From NCBI RefSeq assembly GCF_021869535.1, contig NW_026262679.1:43958001-44022000 (forward strand): DNA of 64,000 nucleotides. The letters run 5' to 3'. Each line of letters opens with the position of its first letter. The stretch's first letter is position 1. The position numbers and the translations under genes were made by a program. The notes below the pieces were generated by a model that saw only the letters and a list, made by a program, of their open reading frames with translations, ran no database searches and had not been told where the DNA came from. This document shows, in pieces, positions 3,263 through 26,505 of the stretch. This stretch comes from Mytilus californianus (taxonomy: Eukaryota).

Positions 3263-5658
3263 TTAATACTATTCGACATTAATGAGGACAATGTTGAGTT
3301 TTCTTGTTTAACAGTTATGAAATATTGTTTAATTTACAAACACCTCTTTGTAGAGGCAAACATTTGATATTCCTACCCTCTGACTTGCACATTTGTTTGG
3401 CACAACTTTTCGGAATTTTCGGTTATTGGTGCTCTTCAACTTCGTAATATTTTATTTGGCTTTGCAACTGTTTTGATTCGAGCGCCACTTATGAGTCTTG
3501 TGTAGACGAAACGCATGCCTGGTGGGCCAAATTATAAGCTCAGCATCTTTGATGTGTTTTTGCACCCAAACAAGGGAGACGGATTTATATAAGTTTTTCT
3601 TGTTTCCGAATCCCCATTTTTTTTATTGTATAATCGTAATTTGTGCACTTTTGAAAAATAAAATATTGTTTAAACTAAACACATAAACAAGTAGTGTGAA
3701 TCAATGGTTTATTTCTATGCCATCCTGTTGAAATGTAGGTAAAAAAATGTATTAAAATGTCGTGGCATAGGTTTATTGTAATGTAAACAGATTTGGTGTT
3801 AAAAATTCAGAAAATAATAGGAAGCTAAAAAATACGGACAGTTTAAACTTGTTCTTATTACAAATATGTTGTTTAATGTAGAAGTAAAAATGAATGTAAT
3901 TGTATGTGTAGCTGATCTCTCTTTTATTTTTTGTATCCTTAATGTAAAAAACAGTGGACAAACATGGATTTTTTTTATCACAAGGAATAATCACCCTTCC
4001 ATATATATTTGTTAGATATCATATAATTATAAAATGAAAGAATTGAATGAGAATGTCTGAGGTATTTCTTTAACGATCATGTTCACATAAAAATACTGAA
4101 TATGACCTGTACACATTTCAATCTGATATTAAGGCCAGACGAAATTAAGTATGCAAATACCATTGCATTCTATATTTTGTTATCATCGAGACCACAAATT
4201 TTACTAATAGAAATGACTTGCCTACCTTTAATTCAATTAAATTTCTGATGTACTATTTCGTTGTGTTTTATTTTATTTCATATTTAGTACAATAAATTTG
4301 TATTTTAATTCGATACGATTATTTACTAAATTATCAAAAATACTGACTGTATTAACCTGTAATCAATTGTTAATTGTTGTAACAACACCTAATGTATTTT
4401 GTTTGTTGGCACAGGTTGAATATTTTTTTAAATGTTGGCATAGGTTGAAGTAAATTCGATGACGTAATGTTTTCTGAAAATTGAGAAAATTCAATTTCAC
4501 TTTCTATTCTGAATAATATGAGATCTGGATAGCAACCCATGCATATATATATCAATTATAAATAATTTTATAATAAATATGCATCGATTTCATTCAAAAC
4601 GTTAAAGATTTTAAACAGGACGGAGATTGTACTTCCTAGGAAGGTAATTGCTACAGTATCAATTTTATTCAGACCAGCGAGCTCAGTACCTATGGTAGGA
4701 CTAACTGGTAAGAGTATTATTATTGTAATAAAGTATAGAAATAGATTTGTAAATATCTAATGGAAAGTATACAACATTTGATACAATGGGGACACCAAAA
4801 ATTCAAAATTGATTCAACGTTGCGTTTTTTTTAATAAAAAAAATTACTGTAACTTTCTGTTTTTAATAATATGTTATCTTGATTACCATTTTGTTAACTA
4901 AGGCACCCACCATTCATCTTAACAATTCTTTCGACTTTGATAACAAAAAAAAATCCCTTTTTTTTTCAATATCTTACAGGAACAAGATTTTTCTTTTTCG
5001 AAACTGATATACTAAATATATAAATGGACGCAACTGTTTCATTTCTGTCGAAAAAAGTGGTATAATAACGTACAGTACCATTACGTTAATACTCAAATTA
5101 TTTAATTTTGGATGTAACACGTCTTCTGATTGGCTGAAAGTTTTTTGTCTATCAGCTCATAGACATAATTTTGTCATGTGACGTCATCAACGTTTTTTCA
5201 TGATTTAGTCCTTAAAATGGAATTTAGAATTAAATTATAAAGAACGACTGTAATATTTTTTCTGTCTATTCTAAATAACATCAGAAATGTGGTGGACACT
5301 TTTAAATAACCAGCTACGCTAATATTTTGATGTTATTTCTTCATAGATATAAAAAAATATTACAGTCTTTCCTTAAATATCACAGCATGTGTACGGGCAA
5401 CTAATAAAGTTTGTAGATGGTGCAAATTTTTAGGTGAAAGTGACAGGGTCTTCAACAGTGTCGGTAGCAAAGGGGAAACATGCAAAATTATGTTGAAAGG
5501 ATATGTATAAGAATTTATATTGGTCCATTTTGGATGGTCAACATCACACTGACCTGATATTAGATAAGAGGCGAATACCATCTAGTACCCCCAAGAGCTT
5601 ACAATTCGAGATAATGTTGATTTTTTAATATGGGTATGCCAATGGATGGTAGAAAGTT

Positions 5659-8275: not shown

Positions 8276-8892
8276 AAAGCACTAATGCTATTACTACCCA
8301 AGGTATAGATTGCATAATTAGTATTTGGCACAACTTTTCTTTTCGGAATTTGCTGTTATTGATGCTCTACAACATTGTATTTGATTTGGCTTTCCAACTT
8401 TTATGGTTCGTGCGCCACTGATGAGTCTTACGAAACGTGCGTCTAGCTAAATAATGAGCCTGGTAGCTTTGACGAGCTTTTTCCAATCTGTCTTTAAATG
8501 AGAATTACTTGTGTAAAAGGTATAAAGAAAAGTTTCATACAATTTTACCAGAAGGAAAATATAAAAGAATTTCTGTAGGGCATAATTAAAAAAATAACTC
8601 ATACGGAATCATTGATACCACATATTATCTGAAGAAAAAACGTGCATGTGAAATATATCTATAAAATAATAATGTTGTCCGAAGAAGTATCATGATTCTA
8701 TATTGAATTTATATTACACTATGGCAGTGTACGAAACTTTTTCTGTAGGAAGCAACCTACGACCAAACCCATTGACAAAATTATATATAATGCGTTTAAC
8801 AAGTGTACACATCACGTTTATCGAAATATTGCAATGTTTAATCAAAATAACTTTAATATCATTTTAGGTAATCAAATAGAAATATATTGACA

Positions 8893-10368
8893 ATGGCTTC
8901 AAATAGTCCAGGCAAACTTCAACCTGCAGATTTTATAGAGGATTTATACAAGACAAATAATGAGAGTGAAGAGCTATTAGAGATATTTGTAAAGAACATG
9001 AACGTGTTTAGCAGTTCGATTTACGACAAGAAACTGTCGGACGATTCTTTATCATTGCTTGTTCATCTAATGGCAAGGGTTTGTGCTTGTACAAGACAGA
9101 AAAAGAATAGCGAAATCTGTAAGCTTTTGAATATGCTGTCTAAATCGCCACTGATCAAATACCGAAGTATTCCACTACTTTTAGGGGAAACATGCAACAA
9201 CTCACGTGGTCATAATTTTCAATGTTTATTATCCGATTACTTAACAATACTTCAAGAAATTTACCTGAGGATACCTCGTTTGTCTACAACTCCACAAGTT
9301 AAGAGACTGGGGAAACTTTTGAAAGAGCAAATAAGCAAATGTGATGATTTAGAAGACAAAGGGATGATGATAGATATTGTGATTGAAACGCTGAATGAAA
9401 TTATGCAGATTGCTGAAGAAAGATCAAGGGCAAAACAAGACGCTGAAGATAAATTTGTTCCTCCAGATGATTTCCGAACTGTGTCAGTTATTCCTGGACA
9501 AAACGACATTCTAAACATTCCAAAGTTCCTAAGACGTAACAAAGTTTGCGGGAAATATTTGAATTTAGATCATTATTTAGATGTACAGTTTAGGTTGTAC
9601 AGGGAAGACTGTGTGTCACCTCTCAGAGATGCTCTTTTGGAATTCAAACAGATAGATAGAGAAAATCGGAAAGAAAATATCAGATTAGAACATGGTCTTA
9701 TGTACAAGAACGTAAAAGTAATAAAACAAATCATTTCTATAGACTCTGGTGAAGTATTTGAAATAAAACTGGACCCAGACCATCGTAAACGTATCAACTG
9801 GAGAAATGCAAAGAGACTTATATATGGTACTTTACTGCTTATTTCCTTTGATCGTTTTAATACGATTTTCTTTGCTGTTGTATCTGAAAGTGAAACGAAA
9901 ATTTTACAAAAGAAAGGTTGCTTTGCTGTACAGGTATTTAGATATGGAAACAATCTAAACCTACCAAGAAATACAGATGGTATAATTATAGAAGCAAATT
10001 CAGCGTATTTTGAAGCATACAAACATGTATTAAAAGTTTTGCAGCATATAAAAGAAGAAACGTTCCCCTTCACTCGATATCTTGTTCACTGTGAGAACGA
10101 GGTCCGTTTCCCATCGTACATTTCAAAAAATTATGTATATGATCTCAGACCTGTAATCAAAAATTGCCGGATAGATCTAGACAACACCTATCGTGGAACT
10201 CGTAGAAATACTATTCCAAAACAGACACCAATAAATAATGCAAAGTTGTCTGAAGAAGACTGGCCGTCCGCCGAGATGTTGAGAATGGACGAATCTCAGC
10301 GGAAAGCGTTTATTGCTGCACTTACAAAGGAATTTGTTCTCATACAAGGGCCACCAGGGACCGGTTAG
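8893..10368 (+). CDS. ZNFX1: ZNFX1-like N-terminal part (helical region and start of helicase), 491 aa, ending at TAG
   Basis: ZNFX1-type motifs PPDDFRTVSVIP, YLDVQFRLYREDCVSPLR, NWRNAKRLIYGTLLLIS, AYFEAYKHVLKVLQ, MDESQRKAFIAALTKEFVLIQGPPGTG. Confidence 0.85.
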   Translation: MASNSPGKLQPADFIEDLYKTNNESEELLEIFVKNMNVFSSSIYDKKLSDDSLSLLVHLMARVCACTRQKKNSEICKLLNMLSKSPLIKYRSIPLLLGETCNNSRGHNFQCLLSDYLTILQEIYLRIPRLSTTPQVKRLGKLLKEQISKCDDLEDKGMMIDIVIETLNEIMQIAEERSRAKQDAEDKFVPPDDFRTVSVIPGQNDILNIPKFLRRNKVCGKYLNLDHYLDVQFRLYREDCVSPLRDALLEFKQIDRENRKENIRLEHGLMYKNVKVIKQIISIDSGEVFEIKLDPDHRKRINWRNAKRLIYGTLLLISFDRFNTIFFAVVSESETKILQKKGCFAVQVFRYGNNLNLPRNTDGIIIEANSAYFEAYKHVLKVLQHIKEETFPFTRYLVHCENEVRFPSYISKNYVYDLRPVIKNCRIDLDNTYRGTRRNTIPKQTPINNAKLSEEDWPSAEMLRMDESQRKAFIAALTKEFVLIQGPPGTG

Positions 10369-13300
10369 ACATACCTTGCATTGCAAATTGCAAAAGCATT
10401 ACTTCATAATAGTAACAGGTGGCTAAGAATGAATTCCAAGGGTAAGGTCGAAAAATCTACACGAAACGCTCGGGGGAATGCACCAAAACCGTATATGTTA
10501 GTCGTCTGTTATACAAACCACGCGTTGGATCAATTTGTTGAGGGGATTATTGATTTTATGCCGGAAACCGTATTTGGTAGTCGATACCCCGAAATAGTTA
10601 GATTTGGAAGTCGATGTAAAAATCCTAAATTTGAAGAACTTTCGATAAAAAACCTACGGAGAAAAGCTCTATCGAAATTTAATAATCCTCGAGATGGAAT
10701 ACTTGAAAAAGCATCAAAAACTAAAAGAAAAATCAAGGAGATTCGAGAAACAATCGAGACATTAAAGAGCAGAAATATTGTATTGTGGTTCGATGTAATG
10801 AAATGTGTTCTTTCAGAAAATATTGCAAGTCAATTTGGAGAAAAGTTTGTTTGGTTGCAGTGGCTACATGTGTTAGAGCAATCATGGTATAAAGAAGTAA
10901 ACAAGCAATATCAAAACCAACAAAATGACGAAGCAATTAAAAATCAACTCGGTGGTTTTGCAACTGAGCTTGAAGAAGTCGAATTTGTTTCATTGATTTC
11001 TGAGAAAGAATTTGCACACAACGTGCGGTATTTGGAGGTTAATGATGTCAATTTTTTGCTCAATACTGATATTATCGGTCTCGATCTGGACAAGCAATAC
11101 GAAAATGAGCTGCAGAAAACAAATAAACTTGAAGAAAAGTGTAGAATAATTTTGCTTTTGGAAAAAGAGAAAGCAGCAAAGGAACTGCATTATGGTAAAG
11201 CCATGTCAGAAGGCCAAGTAAAAAAAATAAAAAGTATCTGGACACTTTCCATAAAAGATCGTTGGAAAATGTATAGGTATTGGTTGATGCAGTACATTAA
11301 GAAACTTCACGAACAACTGCGCAAAAGTGAAAAGAAATTCCATGATATATTTGATGACTACAAGCAAATCAGTATAGAAAAAGACGAATTTGTCATGCAA
11401 CAAGCAACAGTTTTAGCTATGACTACAACAACTGCAGCACGATATAGAGAATCTTTAAGCAAAGTTGGTCCTCTAATCACAATAATTGAAGAAGCAGCAG
11501 AAGTACCAGAGGCTCACATAGTAACTGCGATCAGCCCAAGATGTAAACATTTAATTTTGATCGGGGACCATAAGCAATTGCAACCAAAACCTGCCGTGCA
11601 TGAACTTGCAATTAAATTTAATTTGTCTGTTTCCCTGTTTGAACGAATGGTTAAGAACAACTTGAGCTACTATTGCCTTCAACGACAACATCGAATGAGA
11701 CCAGAAATTTCTGAATTGGTACGCCACATATATCACACTCTTTATGACAACGAAAATGTCTATGAATATCCATCGGTAAAAGGGATACGAAAGAGTGTGT
11801 TCTTTATCACACATAACAAAATTGAAGTTTTCAAAGATGAGGGGAGAAGTTTTTCAAACGAATACGAAGCTGAATATCTCAAAGAGCTTTATCTTTATCT
11901 GCTAAAGCAAAGATATAAACCATCTGATATAACAATAATTACGGCTTACGCTGGTCAGATGTCTTGCTTAGAAGAAAAATTGCCAAGCTCAAAGTTCAAA
12001 GGAGTTAAAATTTGCGTGCTTGACAATTACCAAGGCGAAGAAAATGAAATCATTCTTTTATCATTAGTGCGTAGCAATACGACAGGCGATATCGGATTCC
12101 TAAATCGGGAAAACAGAATTTGCGTGGCTTTGTCTAGAGCAAGGCAAGGACTTTTCATAATAGGTAACAGCGATACATTAACAAAGAAGTCTCAGCACTG
12201 GCAGACTGTAATTGGAAAACTACAAATTCAAGAGAAGGTCAACGATATAGACGAAACATCCCCTAGATACCCATCGCTTGGAAAGGCGTTGCCATTGTAC
12301 TGTCAAAATCATCCAAAAAAAGAAGGCATTCTCGCCGAGTCACCAAGTGACTTCAAAAAAGTAAAAGATGGAGGCTGTGATCTACCATGTGAATTTGAGT
12401 TATCATGTGGACATGCGTGTCGATACGATTGTCATCCATTTGACAGGGAACATAAATCATATAAATGCAAAAAACAATGTTCAGAGACATGTGCAGAAGG
12501 ACATAAATGTTTTAAGAGATGTCATTATGATGACGACTGTCGTTGCAGTGTAGAAATGGCACGCGAACTAAAATGTCAACACATAATTGTTCTTCAATGC
12601 CATGTTCATTACTCTAAATACCCATGCCCAATTAAAGTAATCAGAACATTATTATGTGGACATATCGCAACTATGGAATGTTACGTGGACCCAAACAATG
12701 TTTTATGCAAAGTCTCTGTTGACAGAGAACTGGAGTGTCGACACACAGCACAGTTAAATTGTCATGTTGATCCAAATCGCCACGAGTGTGCTATAGTCCT
12801 GACAGAAACAAGATCAAAGTGTGGTCATGAATTTGAACGCAGGTGTCATGATGCCAATTATGAGAGGTTAAATGAGTGTAGAGTTTTGATTAACGAAAAA
12901 CGAACCTCGTGTGACCATTTGATCGAACGGCATTGTTTCGACACCACATATGAAATGCGTATTGAATGCAGCATTACCGTAACAATGAACAGATCATCCT
13001 GTGGACACGAATATCAAAGACAGTGTCAAGACCGTATGTATGAGATGAGTCATGAATGCAATGACATGGTAACAGAACAGTGGTTATCTTGTAAACATTA
13101 CTACAAAAGACATTGTTTTGACTCTGACTTTGTCCAGAGGCACACTTGTCAAAATAAAATTCGTGACAAAAGAGACGATTGTGGTCATACATATGAAAGA
13201 AATTGTTCAGATACGAATTATCAACATGAACACAAATGCAGCGTCTACGTTGAGAAAAAAGTCCCACGGTGTGACCATAAAGTAAAGCTTCCATGCCACC

Positions 13301-15256
13301 AAGATGTTTCATCGCATAAATGTAGAGAAATCGTTACAAAAGATTTGGAATGCAAACATTACAATACACACGAATGTTGCAATATTGATTCAATCAAATG
13401 TAATAACAAATGCAATAAAATATGCATAAATGGCCACGTATGTACAAATTCATGTCATTTCCCCACTTCCTGTGACTGCATGGAGCTAATCGAAACAATT
13501 TTAGAGGGCTGTAAACACAAACAAAGTATCCCATGTTCAATCGATCCTAAAGTCTATCCTTGTGAAACAATGGTGAAGAAAGTTCTGAATAAATGCCACC
13601 ATTCACAGGACATGGAGTGCCATACGGACCCCGAAACAGTAAGATGTAAATTTGCAGTCCTGAAGTCTTTACCTGAATGTGGACATGAGGAAATGGTTTT
13701 ATGTTCAGAAAATCTTTCAGGCGTAAAATGTACCAAAGAAGTTGAAATAAAGTTAGAAAAATGCGGACATTCATTTGGAATTAAATGCTGGCAGAAAAGA
13801 TATATGTCTTTACAAGAAGTTAAATGTTTCGAGCCTACAATACACACGCGCTCTGATTGTGGACATATTACTACTATTCCATGTTGGGAAATATCAAGTC
13901 ATAACTTCACTCCTTGTCTGAAATTATTAGACACAACACTCTCCTGTGGTCATGTCATTAAAAGCGTTTGCAGTATGGAAGAGGAAAAAATATGCGACAA
14001 GAAATGTGAGAAACCATTGTCATGTGGACATTCATGTCCGGGGCTATGCCATGAATGCGACCATAATAAGGATTGCTCACGCCAGTGTGAAAAGGAATTT
14101 GTGTGTGGCCATGCCTGTCAAAGTGAAGTTTGTATGATGTGCACTCCGTGTCAAAATTCTTGCTTATTTGAATGTTCACATTCGAAATGTCCTTCTCAGT
14201 GCATTGATTCATGTAAACCCTGCAAAGAAAACTGTTCATGGGAATGTGAACATTATAAATGTACAAAGTTATGCTTTGAAGAATGCAACCGCCAAAGATG
14301 TTGTAATAACTGTGATCGAACTTTGTCTTGTGGTCATCAATGTCCTGGATACTGTGGTGAACCATGTCCACTGTTTTGTGCTGATTGTAAACCGGAAATG
14401 TACGTATTAAAAGAAACTTGTAAAGATGAAAAAATTGTAACATTAGTACAATGTGGTCACTCCATTGGCAGTATTTATCTTGATGAGTGTATGGATGAAA
14501 TGAAAAATCACTTAGTGTCAAGATGCCCATGTTGTAGGGCAATTATTACTTTTCATCCAAGATATGAACGAATTTTGAAAAGGCAAAAAATGGCACTAGA
14601 AGATGCTAAATTGAAGATTCGTAAGGTACGACTTAATTCACAAACTATATATCCTGCGTGTGATGCTGAAATGCTAACATCATTTGAACAGTATACAACA
14701 AGTATTGCAACATATCTTCACATTATTCGGCAAACACGACGTAAGAATGAGTTCGATCAGGAATTCCATGACACCGAGAAATTAGCCGAATCCATTCTCA
14801 AAGATATTGAAACAACCCCGGCAACTTCATTTAAAACTTGCTTACAATTGTCAGAGAAAATATTCAGTTTGTATATCCAATGGATATTGTGCCTTTTTAC
14901 GACAAAGCCAGAACTAATGGGCAAATTTGCTGGTTGGTTTCCTGCACTGAAAAAATCTACAAGTAATATTTTAAACGACTTTCTCCCCGAACAGGTGGAG
15001 TCGTTGGAAAATATTTTCGAAGAAAATGATAGAATATCAACCGACACCAATGGTCATCGCACAATGATAAGCCACGATATAGTTGTAATTGTACGCCTGT
15101 TGGAGAAACATCTAAATCAGGAACAGATTACTGAAATATTAAGACCTTTTACTGAAGACATGGAGGGCGATGGTTACTTGGCAAATACAAGAATATATCC
15201 CCAGTTACATAATGTGGTTGGCATACATAGCAGTGATTGGACAATATGTCGAAACG
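10369..15256 (+). CDS. ZNFX1: ZNFX1-like helicase core, zinc-finger array and C-terminal helical region (in frame after the TAG)
   Basis: About 1630 open codons with SF1 motifs Ia-VI, about 24 C-x-H units and a CGH...CPCC module. Ends at donor AAC G|gtaag (15256/15257). Confidence 0.85.
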
Positions 15257-16054
15257 GTAAGAATTTTATCAAGGAATATACGTGTAAGTGAAAAACATAT
15301 ACATACAAAAGTAACCCATTAAAAATAAATGACATGTAGAAATTATATAGAGTCTTCAATAATAAATAGGTTATGCATACTTATATATGTCAAGCTCAGA
15401 ATCTTCACACGTCTTTATATGCTGTGATAAATTTAGAAAGAGACACACAATTATTCGCCATCTATTTCAAATTCATTAAAGGACCTTTTTTTCACTTTTG
15501 TCTGTTTAGACCAGGCCTTTCATTCACAAAAAGTTCGATGTGCATCAAGTACGACAGACCTATTATCGTTCGTCAATTCATTGATCGATTATAGTTGTTT
15601 ACTGATGATCATTTATCGTGCGATCTTTACTGACACGCATTCCCGACGGACCAAAATATTTTCACTTCAATTGATATGTTACCATATATCATATTCATTA
15701 CATTTAAATAATTGTAAGTGAAATACCACAGAACTGAAAAAATATATTAACAGGTAGCATTTTCTGTTCAAAGCGCTTTTCTATATTCTATACTAATCTT
15801 AAACGGAAACTTTCAAATGATAGCTGCAAAAGTTTTGATAGCCAACGTTACATGTTAGTAGAAAGTCTCAAAGATAAAGGTTTTACTACAGGTATTACAA
15901 ACACTTACCATTTTTAAATATCCATGGCAATGAAGTCAACAGTGGCGGATCCAGAAATTTTCATAAGGGAGGGGGCACTGACTGCCTAAGAGGGGGCCCG
16001 CTCCAGTCATGCTTCAGTGATTCCCTATATAATCAAACAATTTTTTCCCACAAA

Positions 16055-16872
16055 AGGGAGGCCCAGGCCATGAAAATGAGGTCAAGGTCAGATAAAACCT
16101 GCCCGACACACAGTTACACCTTACAATCATTCCCTTCACCCAATATAGTTGACCTACTGATTATAGTATTTGAAAAACACATTGAAACACAAAAACTTAA
16201 CATTGATCAATGAACCATTAAAATGAGGTCAAGGTTGGATTATACATGCCAGACAGACATGTACACATTACAATCATTCCATAGACCAAGTATAGCTGAT
16301 CTACTGCTTATAGTATTTGAAAAACAAACCAAAACTCAAAAACTTAACATCGACCAATGAACTATGAAAATGAGGTCAAGGTATGCTGAAACCTGCCAGA
16401 CTGACATGTACCCATTACAATCATTCCATACACCACATATAGTTGACCTACTGCTTATAGTATTTGAGAAAAGGATCTAATCACGTAACTTTTGAACCTT
16501 GATCACTGGTCCATGAAATGAGGTCGAGGTCAGGTGAACCCTGTCTGGCGGACATGTAGACGTTGCAAGGTACCTATATACCAAATATAGTTCTTCTATT
16601 ACTCATAATAAGAGGGAAATTCACATGACAAAAAAACTCAAATTTTTGTTCAAGCAGTCACTGAACCATGAAAGTGAGGTCAATGACAATGGACATATGA
16701 CAGACGGAAAGTTCGGAACATAAGGTAAATGCATACACGATATGAAGCATCCAGGTCTTCTACCTTCTGAAATATACATCTTTATACAAATAGTTTACGC
16801 CGCCGCCGCCGCCGCCGGATAGTAATACCTGAGTCTCGCATACTGCAACTTTCGTCGCAGGCGAGACAAAAA
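16055..16872. mobile_element. HINE-like (Helentron-associated) element with about 148-bp internal repeats, in the last ZNFX1 intron
   Basis: About 5 copies of gaaaatgaggtcaaggt, a (GCC)n microsatellite, and a terminal hairpin tctcgc...gcgaga followed by an A-run. Confidence 0.65.
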
Positions 16873-17117
16873 CTATCGACGGAATGAAGTTTATCATTTT
16901 TTTGCAAACAGAAAGAAAAAATAAATACCTTGAAGTTGCTACAGTTATTCCTTTAAAACTATTATTTTATTGAGTGAATAATATTTTTTCTTAAGTTTAC
17001 CAGCTATTTGCCGCTAGGCATAAAATCATTTGTTATAGTTATTTAATACAAACTTGGGTACGTATATCTACAAACCATTAGTATAAGAATATTTGTATAC
17101 ATAAATATCAATTTTAG

Positions 17118-17851
17118 GTCATACTGTATCAACGATCTTGGATTGTTCTTGCAACATTTGTGATGGTCCCGATAATCAACAAACAGTGTTCCGGTATGAT
17201 GATGGACAAAATGTAGTCACACAAGGACTGACAAAGGCAAGAAGCGCTCAGCTTGGAAAAAGCCAGGTGTCAAATGTTAGAGGTAAAAGAAGTAATTTTT
17301 GTAAAGACAAACCAGCAGATTTTAGTGAGGATTTTAGGAATATGTATTCGCGTCCGAGAGTAAGAAATCCTATCAGAAACAAAAGTAATAGTGAAAACTT
17401 CCACGGTGTTCGGGGACAAAATCTTAGAGGTTGTAGTAAGAGTACGGAGAAAGCCATGCGGGCGAAAACAACAAATGAGGATACAAGGAAATCTTACAAA
17501 AAAGACAAAATGCATCCACTCCCTTCGTTAAAATCCGACGACGAAAGATACCATAATGAAGACGGAAAAGATAAACATAACCTAAAGGAAAATAAACAGA
17601 GGTTTCCGAACAAGGCACCGGCTACAGGTAGAAAAAATAATAAAAGTAGTAGTAATGGTACTGACAGTGGTGTGAATGAACATGCCCCTGGTCATGCAGA
17701 CAACATAGATGGTAATGAAAGTCGCGATAGTAGAAGAGCAGAATTAAATAGAGGCGGACATCGAGATCATCAGCATAACAGAGGATATCCAGGTCGTGGA
17801 CGAGGTCGCGGCGGTAACATGGGTAAGGGTCGTGGTAGTCTCCCCTGGTAA
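17118..17851 (+). CDS. ZNFX1: Terminal exon of the ZNFX1-like gene: rest of an RZ-type finger plus basic low-complexity/RGG tail
   Basis: Acceptor attttag 17111-17117. The phase-1 join reads WTICRN-G-HTVSTILDCSCNIC, matching the W-x2-C-x-NGH motif of ZNFX1, in frame with ORF 17138-17851. ATTAAA follows the stop and AATAAA occurs near 17977. Confidence 0.8.
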
Positions 17852-23109: not shown

Positions 23110-26100
23110 GTATAAGATGTGACACTGTTGTAAGGGTACAATGACGAATATAAGATGTGACACTGTTGTAAGGGTACAATGACGAATATAAGATGTGACA
23201 CTGTTGTAAGGGTACAATGACGAATATAAGATGTGACACTGTTGTAAGGGTACAATGACGAATATAAGATGCGACACATTTGTAAGGGTACAACAATGAC
23301 ATCTATAAGATGTGACTCTATTGTAAGGGTACAGTGACGAATATAAGATGTGACACTGTTGTAAGGTACAGTGACGAATATAAGATGTGACACTGTTGTA
23401 AGGGTACAGTGACGAATATAAGATGTGACACTGTTGTAAGGGTACAGTGACGAATATAAGATGTGACACTGTTGTAAGACGAATATAAGATGTGACACTG
23501 TTGTAAGACGAATATAAGATGTGACACTGTTGTAAGGTACAATGACGGATGTAAGATGTGACGGTAAAGTAAGTTGTATATAACGGGATGCAATGACGAA
23601 TATAAAATGTGACACTGTTGTAAGGGTACAATGACGACTATATGATGTGATACTGCTGTAAGGGTACAATGATGAATGTAAGATGTGACGGTGTATAAAG
23701 TTGTTAAAAACGGGGTACAATGACAAATATGATATGTGACAGTAGCATAAGTTGTATATAACGGGGTACAATGACGGATGCAAGATGTGACGGTGTAGTA
23801 ATTTGTATATAACGGGGTACAATGGCGAATATAAGATGTGACACTGCTGTAAGGGTACAATGATGGATGTAAAATGTGACGGTGTAGTTATTTGTATATA
23901 ACGATGTACAAGGATGAAAGTAAGATGTGACGGTGTAGTAAGTTGTATATATTGGGGTACAATGACAAATATAAGATGTGACAGTGACATAAGTTGTATA
24001 TAACGGGGTTCAAAGACAGATGTAAGATGTTATAACGGGGTTCAATGACAGATGTAAGATGTGACGGTGTAGTAATTTGTATACAACGGGGTACAATGAT
24101 AAATGTAAGATGTGACGGTGTAGTTAGTTGTATATAACGATGTACAAGGATGAAAGTAAGATGTGACGGTGTAGTAAGTTGTATATTACGGGGTACAATG
24201 ACAAATATGATATGTGACAGTGACATAAGTTGTATATAACGGTGTACAAGGATGAATGTAAGATATGACGGTGTAGTAAGTTGTATATTACGGGGTACAA
24301 TGACAAATATGATATGTGACAGTGACATAAGTTGTATATAACGGTATACAAGGATGAATGTAAGATGTGACGGTGTAGTAAGTTGTATATAACAATGTAC
24401 AAGGATGAATGTAAAATGTGACGGTGTAGTAAGTTGTATATAACGATGTACAAGGATGAATGTAAGATGTGACGGTGTAGTAAGTTGTATATAACGGTGT
24501 ACAAGGATGAATATAAGATGTGACAGTGACATAAGATGTATATAACGGTGTAAACGGATGGATGTTAGATGTGACGGTGCAGTAAGTTGTATATAGTGGG
24601 GTACAATGACAAATATGAGATGTGACACTGCTGTAAGGGTACAATGACGACTATAAGATGTGACACTGTTGTAAGGGCACAGTGAGGAATATAAGATGTG
24701 ACACTGTTGTAAGGGTACAATGACTAATGCAAGATGTGACACTGTTGTAAGGTACAATGACGGATGTAAGATGTGACGGTAAAGTAAGTTGTATATAACT
24801 GGATGCAGTGACGAATATAAGATGTGACACTGTTATAAGGGTACAATGACGACGATATGATGTGATACTGCTGTAAGGGTACAATGATGAATGTAAGATG
24901 TGACGGTGTATAAAGTTGTATATAACGGGGTACAATGACAAATATGATATATGACAGTGACATAAGTTGTATATAACGGGGTACAATGACGGATGTAAGA
25001 TGTGACGGTGTAGTAATTTGTTTATAACGGGGTACAATGGCGAATATAAGATGTGACACTGCTGTAAGGGTACAATGATGGATGTAAAATGTGACGGTGT
25101 AGTTATTTGTATATAACGATGTACAAGGATGAAAGTAAGATGTGACGGTGTAGTAAGTTGTATATATTGGGGTACAATGACAAATGTAAGATGTGACAGT
25201 GACATAAGTTGTATATAACGGGGTTCAATGACAGATGTAAGATGTTATAACGGGGTTCAATGACAGATGTAAGATGTGACGGTGTAGTAATTTGTATACA
25301 ACGGGGTACAATGATAAATGTAAGATGTGACGGTGTAGTTAGTTGTATATAACGATGTACAAGGATGAAAGTAAGATGTGACGGTGTAGTAAGTTGTATA
25401 TTACGGGGTACAATGACAAATATGATATGTGACAGTGACAGTGACATAAGTTGTATATAACGGTGTACAAGGATGAATGTAAGATGTGACGGTGTAGTAA
25501 GTTGTACATTACGGGGTACAATGACAAATATGATATGTGACAGTGACATAAGTTGTATATAACGGTATACAAGGATGAATGTAAGATGTGACGGTGTAGT
25601 AAGTTGTATATAACAATGTACAAGGATGAATGTAAAATGTGACGGTGTAGTAAGTTGTATATAACGATGTACAAGGATGAATGTAAGATGTGACGGTGTA
25701 GTAAGTTGTATATAACGGTGTACAAGGATGAATATAAGATGTGACAGTGACATAAGTTGTAAATAACGGGGTACAATGACGGATGTAAGATGTGACGGTG
25801 TAGTAATTTGTATATAACGGGGTACAATGGCGAAAATAAGATGTGACACTGCTGTAAAGGTACAATGATGAATGTAAGATGTGGCGGTGTAGTAAGTTGT
25901 ATATAACGGTGTACAAGGATGAATGTAAGATGTGACGGTGTAGTAAGTGGTATATTACGGGATACAATGACACATATGATATGTGACAGTGACATAAGTT
26001 GTATATAACGGTGTTCAAGGATGGATGTAAGATGTGACGGTGTAGTAAGTTGTATATTACGGGGTACAATGACAAATATGATATGTGACTGTGACATAAG

Positions 26101-26505
26101 TTGTATATCAAGGTGTACAAGGATGGATGTAAGATGTGAAGGTGTAGTAAGTTGTATATTACGGGGTACAATTGCACATATGATATGTGACAGTGACATA
26201 AGTTGTGTATAACGGGGTACAATGATGGATGTAAGATATGACGATGTAGTAAGTTGTATATAACGGGGTACAATGATGGATGTAAGATGTGACGGTGTAG
26301 TAAGTTGTATATTATGGGGTACAATGACAAATATGATATGTGACAGTGACATAAATTGTATATAACGGGGTACAATGATGGATGTTAGATTTGGCGGTAA
26401 AGTAAGTTGTATATAACGGGGTACAATGACGAATATAAGACGTCACACTGTTGTAAGGGTACAATGACAAATATAAGATTTGACACTGTTGTAAGGGTAC
26501 AATGT
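23110..26505. repeat. 3.4-kb composite minisatellite of related 38-bp and 51-bp units
   Basis: 38-mer gatgtgacactgttgtaagggtacaatgacgaatataa and 51-mer gatgtgacggtgtagtaagttgtatataacggggtacaatgacggatgtaa, with a higher-order duplication at offset about 1215 bp. Confidence 0.95.

What the first reader, a model, noticed from the sequence alone, without database searches (positions are those of the whole stretch)
10339..10380. Amber stop exactly at the catalytic Walker A lysine of an otherwise intact ZNFX1
Seen in the sequence: ...caa ggg cca cca ggg acc ggt TAG aca tac ctt..., i.e. QGPPGTG*TYL. One A>T change from AAG explains it. The other roughly 2360 codons and both splice junctions are intact. 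Established: GxxGxGK-T is the SF1 helicase P-loop, and ZNFX1 is an RNA-sensing antiviral helicase of the UPF1 family. Inference, four options. (a) A recent or segregating null allele in an immune gene family; the stop lies far upstream of the last intron, so the mRNA would be an NMD target. (b) An assembly error. (c) Regulated recoding: UAG is the preferred ADAR triplet, and A-to-I editing would give Trp, producing a full-length but ATPase-dead zinc-finger/ligase scaffold, as at the HDV amber/W site. (d) Readthrough, although the 3' context ACATAC is not a known strong readthrough motif. Options (a) and (b) are the most parsimonious.
Basis: partly seen in the sequence, partly recalled or inferred. 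Interest (0 to 1): 0.78.

Follow-up and report, generated by a model that had tools for sequence, protein, structure and literature searches.

The report
Nonsense allele in a mussel ZNFX1 copy
One copy of a tandemly duplicated antiviral helicase gene (ZNFX1-like) in this mussel genome carries a real, recent single-base stop codon, while other mussels of the same species and the sister species still have the intact lysine codon, so it is an ordinary segregating null allele.

Summary
TAG at 10366-10368 is in frame and is the only internal stop in a 2365-codon ZNFX1-like gene. The coding sequence is 8893-15256 plus 17118-17851. The stop replaces the Walker A lysine of GPPGTGKT.

Reads decide the interpretation:
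- A DNA run of the same species (X1, depth about 41) reads T, so this is not an assembly slip.
- A spliced RNA contig from a second study (X7) reads A, giving AAG.
- Raw RNA reads from a third study (X24, 2 of 2) read A.
- DNA of the sister species (X13) reads A.

The Mytilus coruscus assembly orthologue and five paralogues all have Lys (AAG or AAA). TAG is therefore a derived, polymorphic A>T nonsense change.

It is also young. dN/dS against the orthologue is 0.45, with 0.62 before the stop and 0.40 after it. The stop-bearing lineage has 35 nonsynonymous and 17 synonymous changes, against 38 and 19 on the sister lineage.

Nothing supports recoding. The stop is not conserved, no A>G was seen at 10367, and no duplex covers the site. 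However, no RNA from a proven carrier was examined.

The gene lies in a tandem cluster of intact paralogues, in a family that also holds other broken copies. Interest is low.

The parts
4677..4707 (+). 3' end of the non-coding first exon (5'UTR). Its start was not determined. The donor G|GTAAGA follows at 4708.
   Evidence: The RNA contig of run X7 has 101 loose letters before 8867. They match 4677-4706. The sequence was read.
8868..15256 (+). Large coding exon. ATG at 8893, then the N-terminal region, the ZNFX1 domain, the SF1 helicase core and the Cys/His-rich zinc-finger region. It ends in phase 1 at the donor G|GTAAGA.
   Evidence: All RNA reads of X24 have the first mate on the minus strand, which in most stranded libraries means the RNA comes from the + strand.
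10348..10371 (+). Walker A (motif I) G-P-P-G-T-G-[K>stop]-T of the SF1 helicase core.
10366..10368 (+). Premature amber stop, codon 492. The derived T at 10366 replaces the ancestral A (AAG, Lys).
   Evidence: X1 DNA reads T, while X7 RNA contig, X24 raw RNA reads (2 of 2) and X13 sister-species DNA read A; paralogues and the M. coruscus orthologue have AAG or AAA.
15257..17117 (+). Last intron (GT..AG), 4.9 kb downstream of the premature stop.
   Evidence: The annotated M. coruscus protein P0001 joins the same two exons. It was not confirmed by reads of this species, because the stretch given to read laying ended at 14599.
17118..17851 (+). Terminal coding exon, holding the rest of the short RZ-like Cys motif and a basic tail with an RGG-rich end. 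The stop is at 17849-17851.
   Evidence: 88% identical to the C-terminus of P0001.

Best explanation
This is a young loss-of-function allele. A single A>T substitution (AAG to TAG, Lys492 to stop) sits in one member of a tandemly duplicated ZNFX1-like antiviral helicase family of a Mytilus mussel. The allele is carried by the sequenced reference individual, and the ancestral intact allele still segregates in the species. Shown: the T is in genomic reads; conspecific RNA and the sister species have A; the rest of the gene shows no decay. Inferred: the allele can make at most a 491-residue N-terminal fragment that lacks the helicase core, the zinc fingers and the C-terminal finger. Also inferred: its mRNA should be a nonsense-mediated decay substrate, because the stop lies 4.9 kb upstream of the last exon junction. 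Also inferred: the loss is tolerated because three intact close paralogues lie within 190 kb and more than ten further copies exist.
For: Reads:
- At 10366 the DNA run X1 (same species) reads T in an unbranched 1289-nt contig of depth 41.
- X7 is a 2356-nt RNA contig, 99.5% identical to the window and spliced at its 5' end. It reads A.
- X24 raw stranded RNA reads show A in 2 of 2.
- X13, sister-species DNA, reads A.
- The A allele travels with other haplotype SNPs, such as 10272 C>T.

Orthologue: the syntenic M. coruscus locus is 97.2% identical in nucleotides and has AAG.

Paralogues: all five compared have Lys, AAG in the three closest.

Selection:
- dN/dS against the orthologue is 0.45 overall, 0.62 before the stop and 0.40 after it.
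- Polarised changes are 35 N: 17 S on this lineage and 38 N: 19 S on the coruscus lineage.
- dN/dS against the three closest paralogues is 0.28-0.29 overall, 0.29-0.30 before the stop and 0.27-0.29 after it.

Family context: intact tandem paralogues lie at C99:43.78, 43.83 and 43.86 Mb, and other family members are broken (L007, L015/L016/L019, L023).

Assembly: HiFi at 45x, QV 59.
Against: X1 may come from the same individual as the assembly. If so, the stop is proven real but is not yet shown in a second individual, and it could be a private mutation. Only four runs could be laid. Contigs drop minor variants, so zygosity and allele frequency are unknown. Nonsense-mediated decay and absence of the protein are inferred, not measured. 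No RNA from a proven carrier of TAG was seen.
Confidence: 0.88

Rival explanations
1. Assembly or consensus error: the individual really has AAG and the T is an artefact.
For: A single-base difference from every relative is what an error would look like. X1 differs from the assembly at 10759, so at least one base nearby is either an error or a difference between individuals.
Against: X1 contigs read T at depth 41 with no alternative contig. The assembly is HiFi at 45x with QV 59, and the site is not in a homopolymer. NCBI's annotation already carries the 491-residue truncated product.
Confidence: 0.03
2. Regulated recoding. UAG is edited by ADAR to UGG (Trp), or read through, giving a full-length ATPase-dead ZNFX1 scaffold.
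For: UAG is a good ADAR triplet. The local 300-nt fold is slightly more stable than shuffles, z = -2.1. The downstream 1873 codons are intact. No RNA from a proven TAG carrier was examined, so this is not directly excluded.
Against: A programmed recoding site should be conserved. Here conspecifics, the sister species and all paralogues encode Lys directly. No A>G at 10367 was listed in any run. No inverted repeat of 16 nt or more has an arm over the site. The intact downstream frame is explained by the youth of the mutation.
Confidence: 0.02
3. Fixed pseudogene. The copy is dead in the species, and the A-bearing sequences come from another, unassembled near-identical copy.
For: The family undergoes birth and death: several members have stops. 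Mussel genomes are reported to have extensive presence/absence variation (own knowledge: Gerdol et al. 2020, listed among the assemblies compared in the genome paper read).
Against: In this genome the next closest copy is only 79% identical in protein, whereas the X7 contig is 99.5% identical in DNA over 2.4 kb. There is no other defect and no excess of nonsynonymous change on this lineage.
Confidence: 0.05

Closest known systems
ZNFX1 (NFX1-type zinc finger-containing protein 1), a UPF1-like SF1 RNA helicase with reported antiviral function. Solved structure 9q9z. Metazoan survey by Blasi et al. 2022, Fish Shellfish Immunol 121:456, cited in PMC9334734.
   Same: ZNFX1 domain, AAA_11 and AAA_12 helicase core, a Cys/His-rich zinc-finger region and a C-terminal Cys motif. 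The Walker A block is identical to the solved protein apart from the stop. Named NFX1-type zinc finger-containing protein 1-like relatives occur in all Mytilus genomes and in other bivalves.
   Different: This allele has a stop in place of the Walker A lysine. The gene is one of at least 15 ZNFX1-like loci in the genome, arranged in tandem clusters, against a single gene in human. The C-terminal finger is shorter than the usual RZ motif and is followed by a basic tail with an RGG-rich end.
Segregating nonsense (loss-of-function) polymorphisms in expanded, redundant immune gene families.
   Same: A derived single-base stop, an intact allele still present in the species, no secondary decay, and close intact paralogues nearby.
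   Different: Nothing substantive. Frequency and zygosity were not measured.
HDV amber/W site and other ADAR stop-to-Trp recoding.
   Same: Only the triplet UAG.
   Different: There is no conservation of the stop, no editing signal at 10367 and no long duplex over the site.

Membership tests
ZNFX1 / UPF1-like SF1 helicase | ZNFX1 domain (PF25396) N-terminal to the helicase core | tested here: met
   E = 1.5e-20, 73.6 bits against a cutoff of 27, residues 268-368.
ZNFX1 / UPF1-like SF1 helicase | SF1 helicase core (AAA_11 plus AAA_12) | tested here: met
   AAA_12 E = 2.1e-40 and AAA_11 E = 5e-16 in the piece after the stop; the orthologue aligns to the solved ZNFX1 structure 9q9z, E = 1.2e-20.
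ZNFX1 / UPF1-like SF1 helicase | Intact Walker A GxxGxGK[T/S] | tested here: not met
   this allele has GPPGTG-stop-T. The intact allele in X7 and X24, the orthologue and all paralogues have GPPGTGKT. The gene belongs to the family, but this allele cannot encode an active member.
ZNFX1 / UPF1-like SF1 helicase | NFX1-type zinc fingers and C-terminal RZ finger | tested here: inconclusive
   Cys/His-rich repeats are plain in the translation, but Pfam gave no zinc-finger family at E <= 0.01. The C-terminal motif is W-x2-C-x2-G-H followed by C-x-C-x2-C, shorter than the usual RZ pattern recalled from memory.
Segregating null (nonsense) allele | The stop is present in genomic reads, not only in the assembly | tested here: met
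   X1 reads T at depth 41.3 with no alternative.
Segregating null (nonsense) allele | An intact allele is present in other individuals of the species | tested here: met
   X7 (contig) and X24 (2 of 2 raw reads), from two other studies of the same organism label, read A at 10366.
Segregating null (nonsense) allele | The stop is the derived state | tested here: met
   sister-species reads, the sister-species assembly and the paralogues all encode Lys.
Segregating null (nonsense) allele | The stop is seen in two or more independent individuals, with a measured frequency | not testable with these tools
   It is unknown whether X1 is the reference individual.
Programmed recoding site (ADAR amber/W or readthrough) | The genomic stop is conserved among relatives | tested here: not met
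Programmed recoding site (ADAR amber/W or readthrough) | A>G in RNA at the middle base of the stop | tested here: inconclusive
   One search lists no change at 10367. However, the RNA runs examined carry the AAG allele, so no UAG transcript was observed.
Programmed recoding site (ADAR amber/W or readthrough) | An extended RNA duplex over the site | tested here: not met
   only an imperfect local hairpin, z = -2.1; no inverted repeat arm overlaps 10366.

The most novel reading that the evidence does not exclude
In carriers of the TAG allele the UAG is partly decoded, by readthrough or by A-to-I editing to UGG. That would give a full-length ZNFX1 paralogue without the P-loop lysine, acting as an ATPase-dead scaffold or dominant modulator of its tandem paralogues, with the allele kept in the population for that reason. 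This is not excluded only because no RNA or protein from a proven carrier was seen.
Probability: 0.02. Interest if true: 0.75.

Novelty: new member of a known kind. Interest (0 to 1): 0.15.

Why it matters
It matters little beyond annotation. It documents a natural knockout allele of one ZNFX1-like paralogue in a wild mussel. That could serve as a marker of birth-and-death turnover in an expanded antiviral helicase family, and as a ready-made null for allele-specific expression or decay studies. It also warns that the reference genome carries the non-functional allele of this gene. The public annotation therefore shows a 491-residue fragment where most of the species probably has a protein of about 2365 residues.

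Tried and rejected
- Assembly error: rejected by read support for T and by assembly quality.
- ADAR or readthrough recoding: no conservation, no A>G at 10367, no duplex. Kept only as a 2% rival.
- Relaxed constraint after the stop: not seen. dN/dS is 0.40 after the stop and 0.62 before it against the orthologue, and about 0.29 on both sides against the paralogues.
- Excess nonsynonymous change on the stop-bearing lineage: not seen, 35:17 against 38:19.
- The SNPs listed gave 18 nonsynonymous to 9 synonymous. That list is truncated and biased (165 rows not shown), so I do not rely on it.
- Looking for other carriers through the protein collection failed. An exact look-up of the 491-residue product found no other contig. 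The word search found it only on the window's own contig, clustered with the M. coruscus 794-residue model. This is uninformative about frequency.
- The two searches of earlier findings added nothing.

Full report
**Observation.** The window reads caa ggg cca cca ggg acc ggt TAG aca tac ctt at 10345-10377. The two long ORFs, 8887-10368 and 10381-15291, share one frame. Their translations join as ...VLIQGPPGTG*TYLALQIAK....

Pfam places a ZNFX1 domain (E = 1.5e-20) and the start of AAA_11 before the stop. The rest of AAA_11 and AAA_12 (E = 2e-40) follow it. The big exon ends at a canonical donor (G|GTAAGA, 15257). An acceptor at 17117 continues the frame into a 244-codon terminal exon.

The assembled coding sequence is 7098 nt, which is 2365 codons plus the final stop. 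Codon 492 is its only internal stop. The M. coruscus protein model P0001 uses the same exon join. A 5'UTR exon ending at 4707 is spliced to 8868, as shown by the loose end of an RNA contig.

**Whose genome.** The genome has 1.652 Gb in 175 contigs, and the window lies on a contig of 132,162,296 bases. Named NCBI proteins of Mytilus californianus sit on a contig of exactly that length. The published M. californianus reference is 1.65 Gb, built from PacBio HiFi at 45x with QV 59 and 2.73% heterozygosity (PMC9710001). I take the genome to be that species. The coded 'organism B' is probably M. coruscus, whose orthologue is 95% identical in protein.

- X1 is a DNA run of the same organism and the best holder of the stretch. 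It covers 9588-10876 with one unbranched contig of depth 41 that reads T at 10366, with no alternative contig. The stop is therefore in reads, not only in the assembly.
- X7 comes from another study. It is spliced at the 5'UTR junction and is therefore RNA. Its 2356-nt contig differs from the window at 11 places (99.5% identity) and reads A.
- X24 is raw stranded RNA reads from a third study. It reads A in 2 of 2 reads that are otherwise identical to the window.
- X13 is DNA of the sister organism and reads A.

The A allele is linked to other SNPs. 10272 C>T occurs in X7, X24 and X13, and 10448 T>A in X7 and X13. These are haplotype differences, not RNA-DNA differences. No change at 10367 was listed in any run.

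**Polarity.** The syntenic locus in the M. coruscus assembly (L036) aligns over the exon at 97.2% nucleotide identity, its flanks align too, and it has AAG. Five paralogues from this genome all have Lys at the site, AAG in the three closest and AAA in two more distant ones.

**Age.** Against the M. coruscus orthologue there are 114 nonsynonymous and 62 synonymous differences. dN is 0.023, dS is 0.051 and dN/dS is 0.45. My own rough chi-square, comparing the observed 114:62 with the roughly 4:1 ratio of nonsynonymous to synonymous sites, is about 26.

The ratio is 0.62 before the stop and 0.40 after it, so nothing is relaxed downstream. Polarising single-base differences with three paralogues gives 35 N: 17 S on the stop-bearing lineage and 38 N: 19 S on the coruscus lineage.

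Against the three closest paralogues the ratio is 0.28-0.29 overall, 0.29-0.30 before the stop and 0.27-0.29 after it. A three-taxon split of those distances, done by hand, gives this lineage about 0.36 against about 0.21 for its paralogues. That is somewhat faster, but still clearly constrained. The gene was under purifying selection for essentially all of its history, and the stop has left no trail of decay.

**Context.** The gene lies in a tandem cluster. Intact paralogues of 2146, 2162 and 2196 open codons lie 97-190 kb away on the opposite strand. They are 73-79% identical in protein over the 677-residue query taken just after the stop. More than ten further ZNFX1-like loci lie on four other contigs.

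Some members are visibly broken: L007 has a TAA, L015/L016/L019 have several stops, and L023 is also broken. This is the birth-and-death pattern expected of an expanded immune family. ZNFX1 as an ancient metazoan antiviral helicase is discussed by Blasi et al. 2022, as cited in PMC9334734.

**Mechanism.** Shown: a derived nonsense SNP on one haplotype, with the intact allele expressed in other animals. Inferred:
- The allele yields at most the 491-residue N-terminal fragment, which NCBI already lists as a protein of this contig.
- The stop lies 4.9 kb upstream of the last exon junction, so the transcript should be a target of nonsense-mediated decay.
- Redundancy with the neighbouring paralogues makes the loss tolerable.

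**Why the position means nothing.** In this gene 994 codons are one step from a stop. A stop truncates the protein whatever residue it replaces. Hitting the P-loop lysine is a coincidence noticed after the fact.

**Recoding.** A programmed amber site should be conserved, and this one is absent from conspecifics, the sister species and the paralogues. The local 300-nt fold is only mildly more stable than shuffles (z = -2.1) and puts the UAG in an imperfect hairpin. No inverted repeat of 16 nt or more has an arm over it. The one gap is that the RNA runs examined carry AAG, so no UAG transcript has been looked at. I leave 2% for this reading.

**Limits.**
- X1 may be the reference individual itself, so the stop is not yet shown in a second animal.
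- Contigs hide minor variants, so zygosity is uncertain. X1 shows no second haplotype over 6 kb despite 2.73% genome-wide heterozygosity. That suggests homozygosity or hemizygosity, but I could not test depth elsewhere.
- Allele frequency is unknown.
- The last intron was not confirmed by reads of this species.

**Verdict.** This is a real, young, derived nonsense allele of one ZNFX1-like paralogue.

Noticed in passing
L036:7606-17477 (M. coruscus assembly GCA_011752425.2), equivalent to window 11252: The sister-species orthologue keeps the Walker A lysine. In that assembly it has one extra C, which shifts the frame and splits the annotation into a 794-residue model and a 1585-residue model. 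The sister-organism DNA contig of run X13 spans the place without a gap, so this is either a long-read assembly error or a second, independent null allele.
   Followed up: partly
window 23111-26504: A 3.4-kb satellite array of 38-nt and 51-nt units with higher-order periods of 102 and 153 nt. It has strong GC skew (0.55) and produces many spurious minus-strand ORFs.
   Followed up: partly
G000:C99:43083380-43085398 (L007); G000:C165:43882975-43884897 (L015, L016, L019); G000:C165:44248701-44249111 (L023): Other ZNFX1-like family members in the same genome carry in-frame stops, several of them at the first C165 locus. The family therefore contains older pseudogenes as well as this young null allele.
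   Followed up: no
window 15240-15256 plus 17118-17190: The C-terminal Cys motif spans the last intron and is shorter than the usual RZ finger. It is followed by a basic, low-complexity tail with an RGG-rich end. The M. coruscus model has the same arrangement, with 88% identity.
   Followed up: partly
window 13206 (codon 1438) in run X7: The intact-lysine haplotype seen in the X7 RNA has TGT>TGG (Cys to Trp) in the zinc-finger region, along with several other nonsynonymous differences. Of the 27 listed differences from the other runs (X7, X13, X24, X1), 18 are nonsynonymous, but the list is truncated and biased.
   Followed up: partly
window 10759: Run X1 reads G where the assembly has A (Thr to Ala, codon 623), at full depth. 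Either X1 is not the assembled individual or the assembly differs from its reads here.
   Followed up: no
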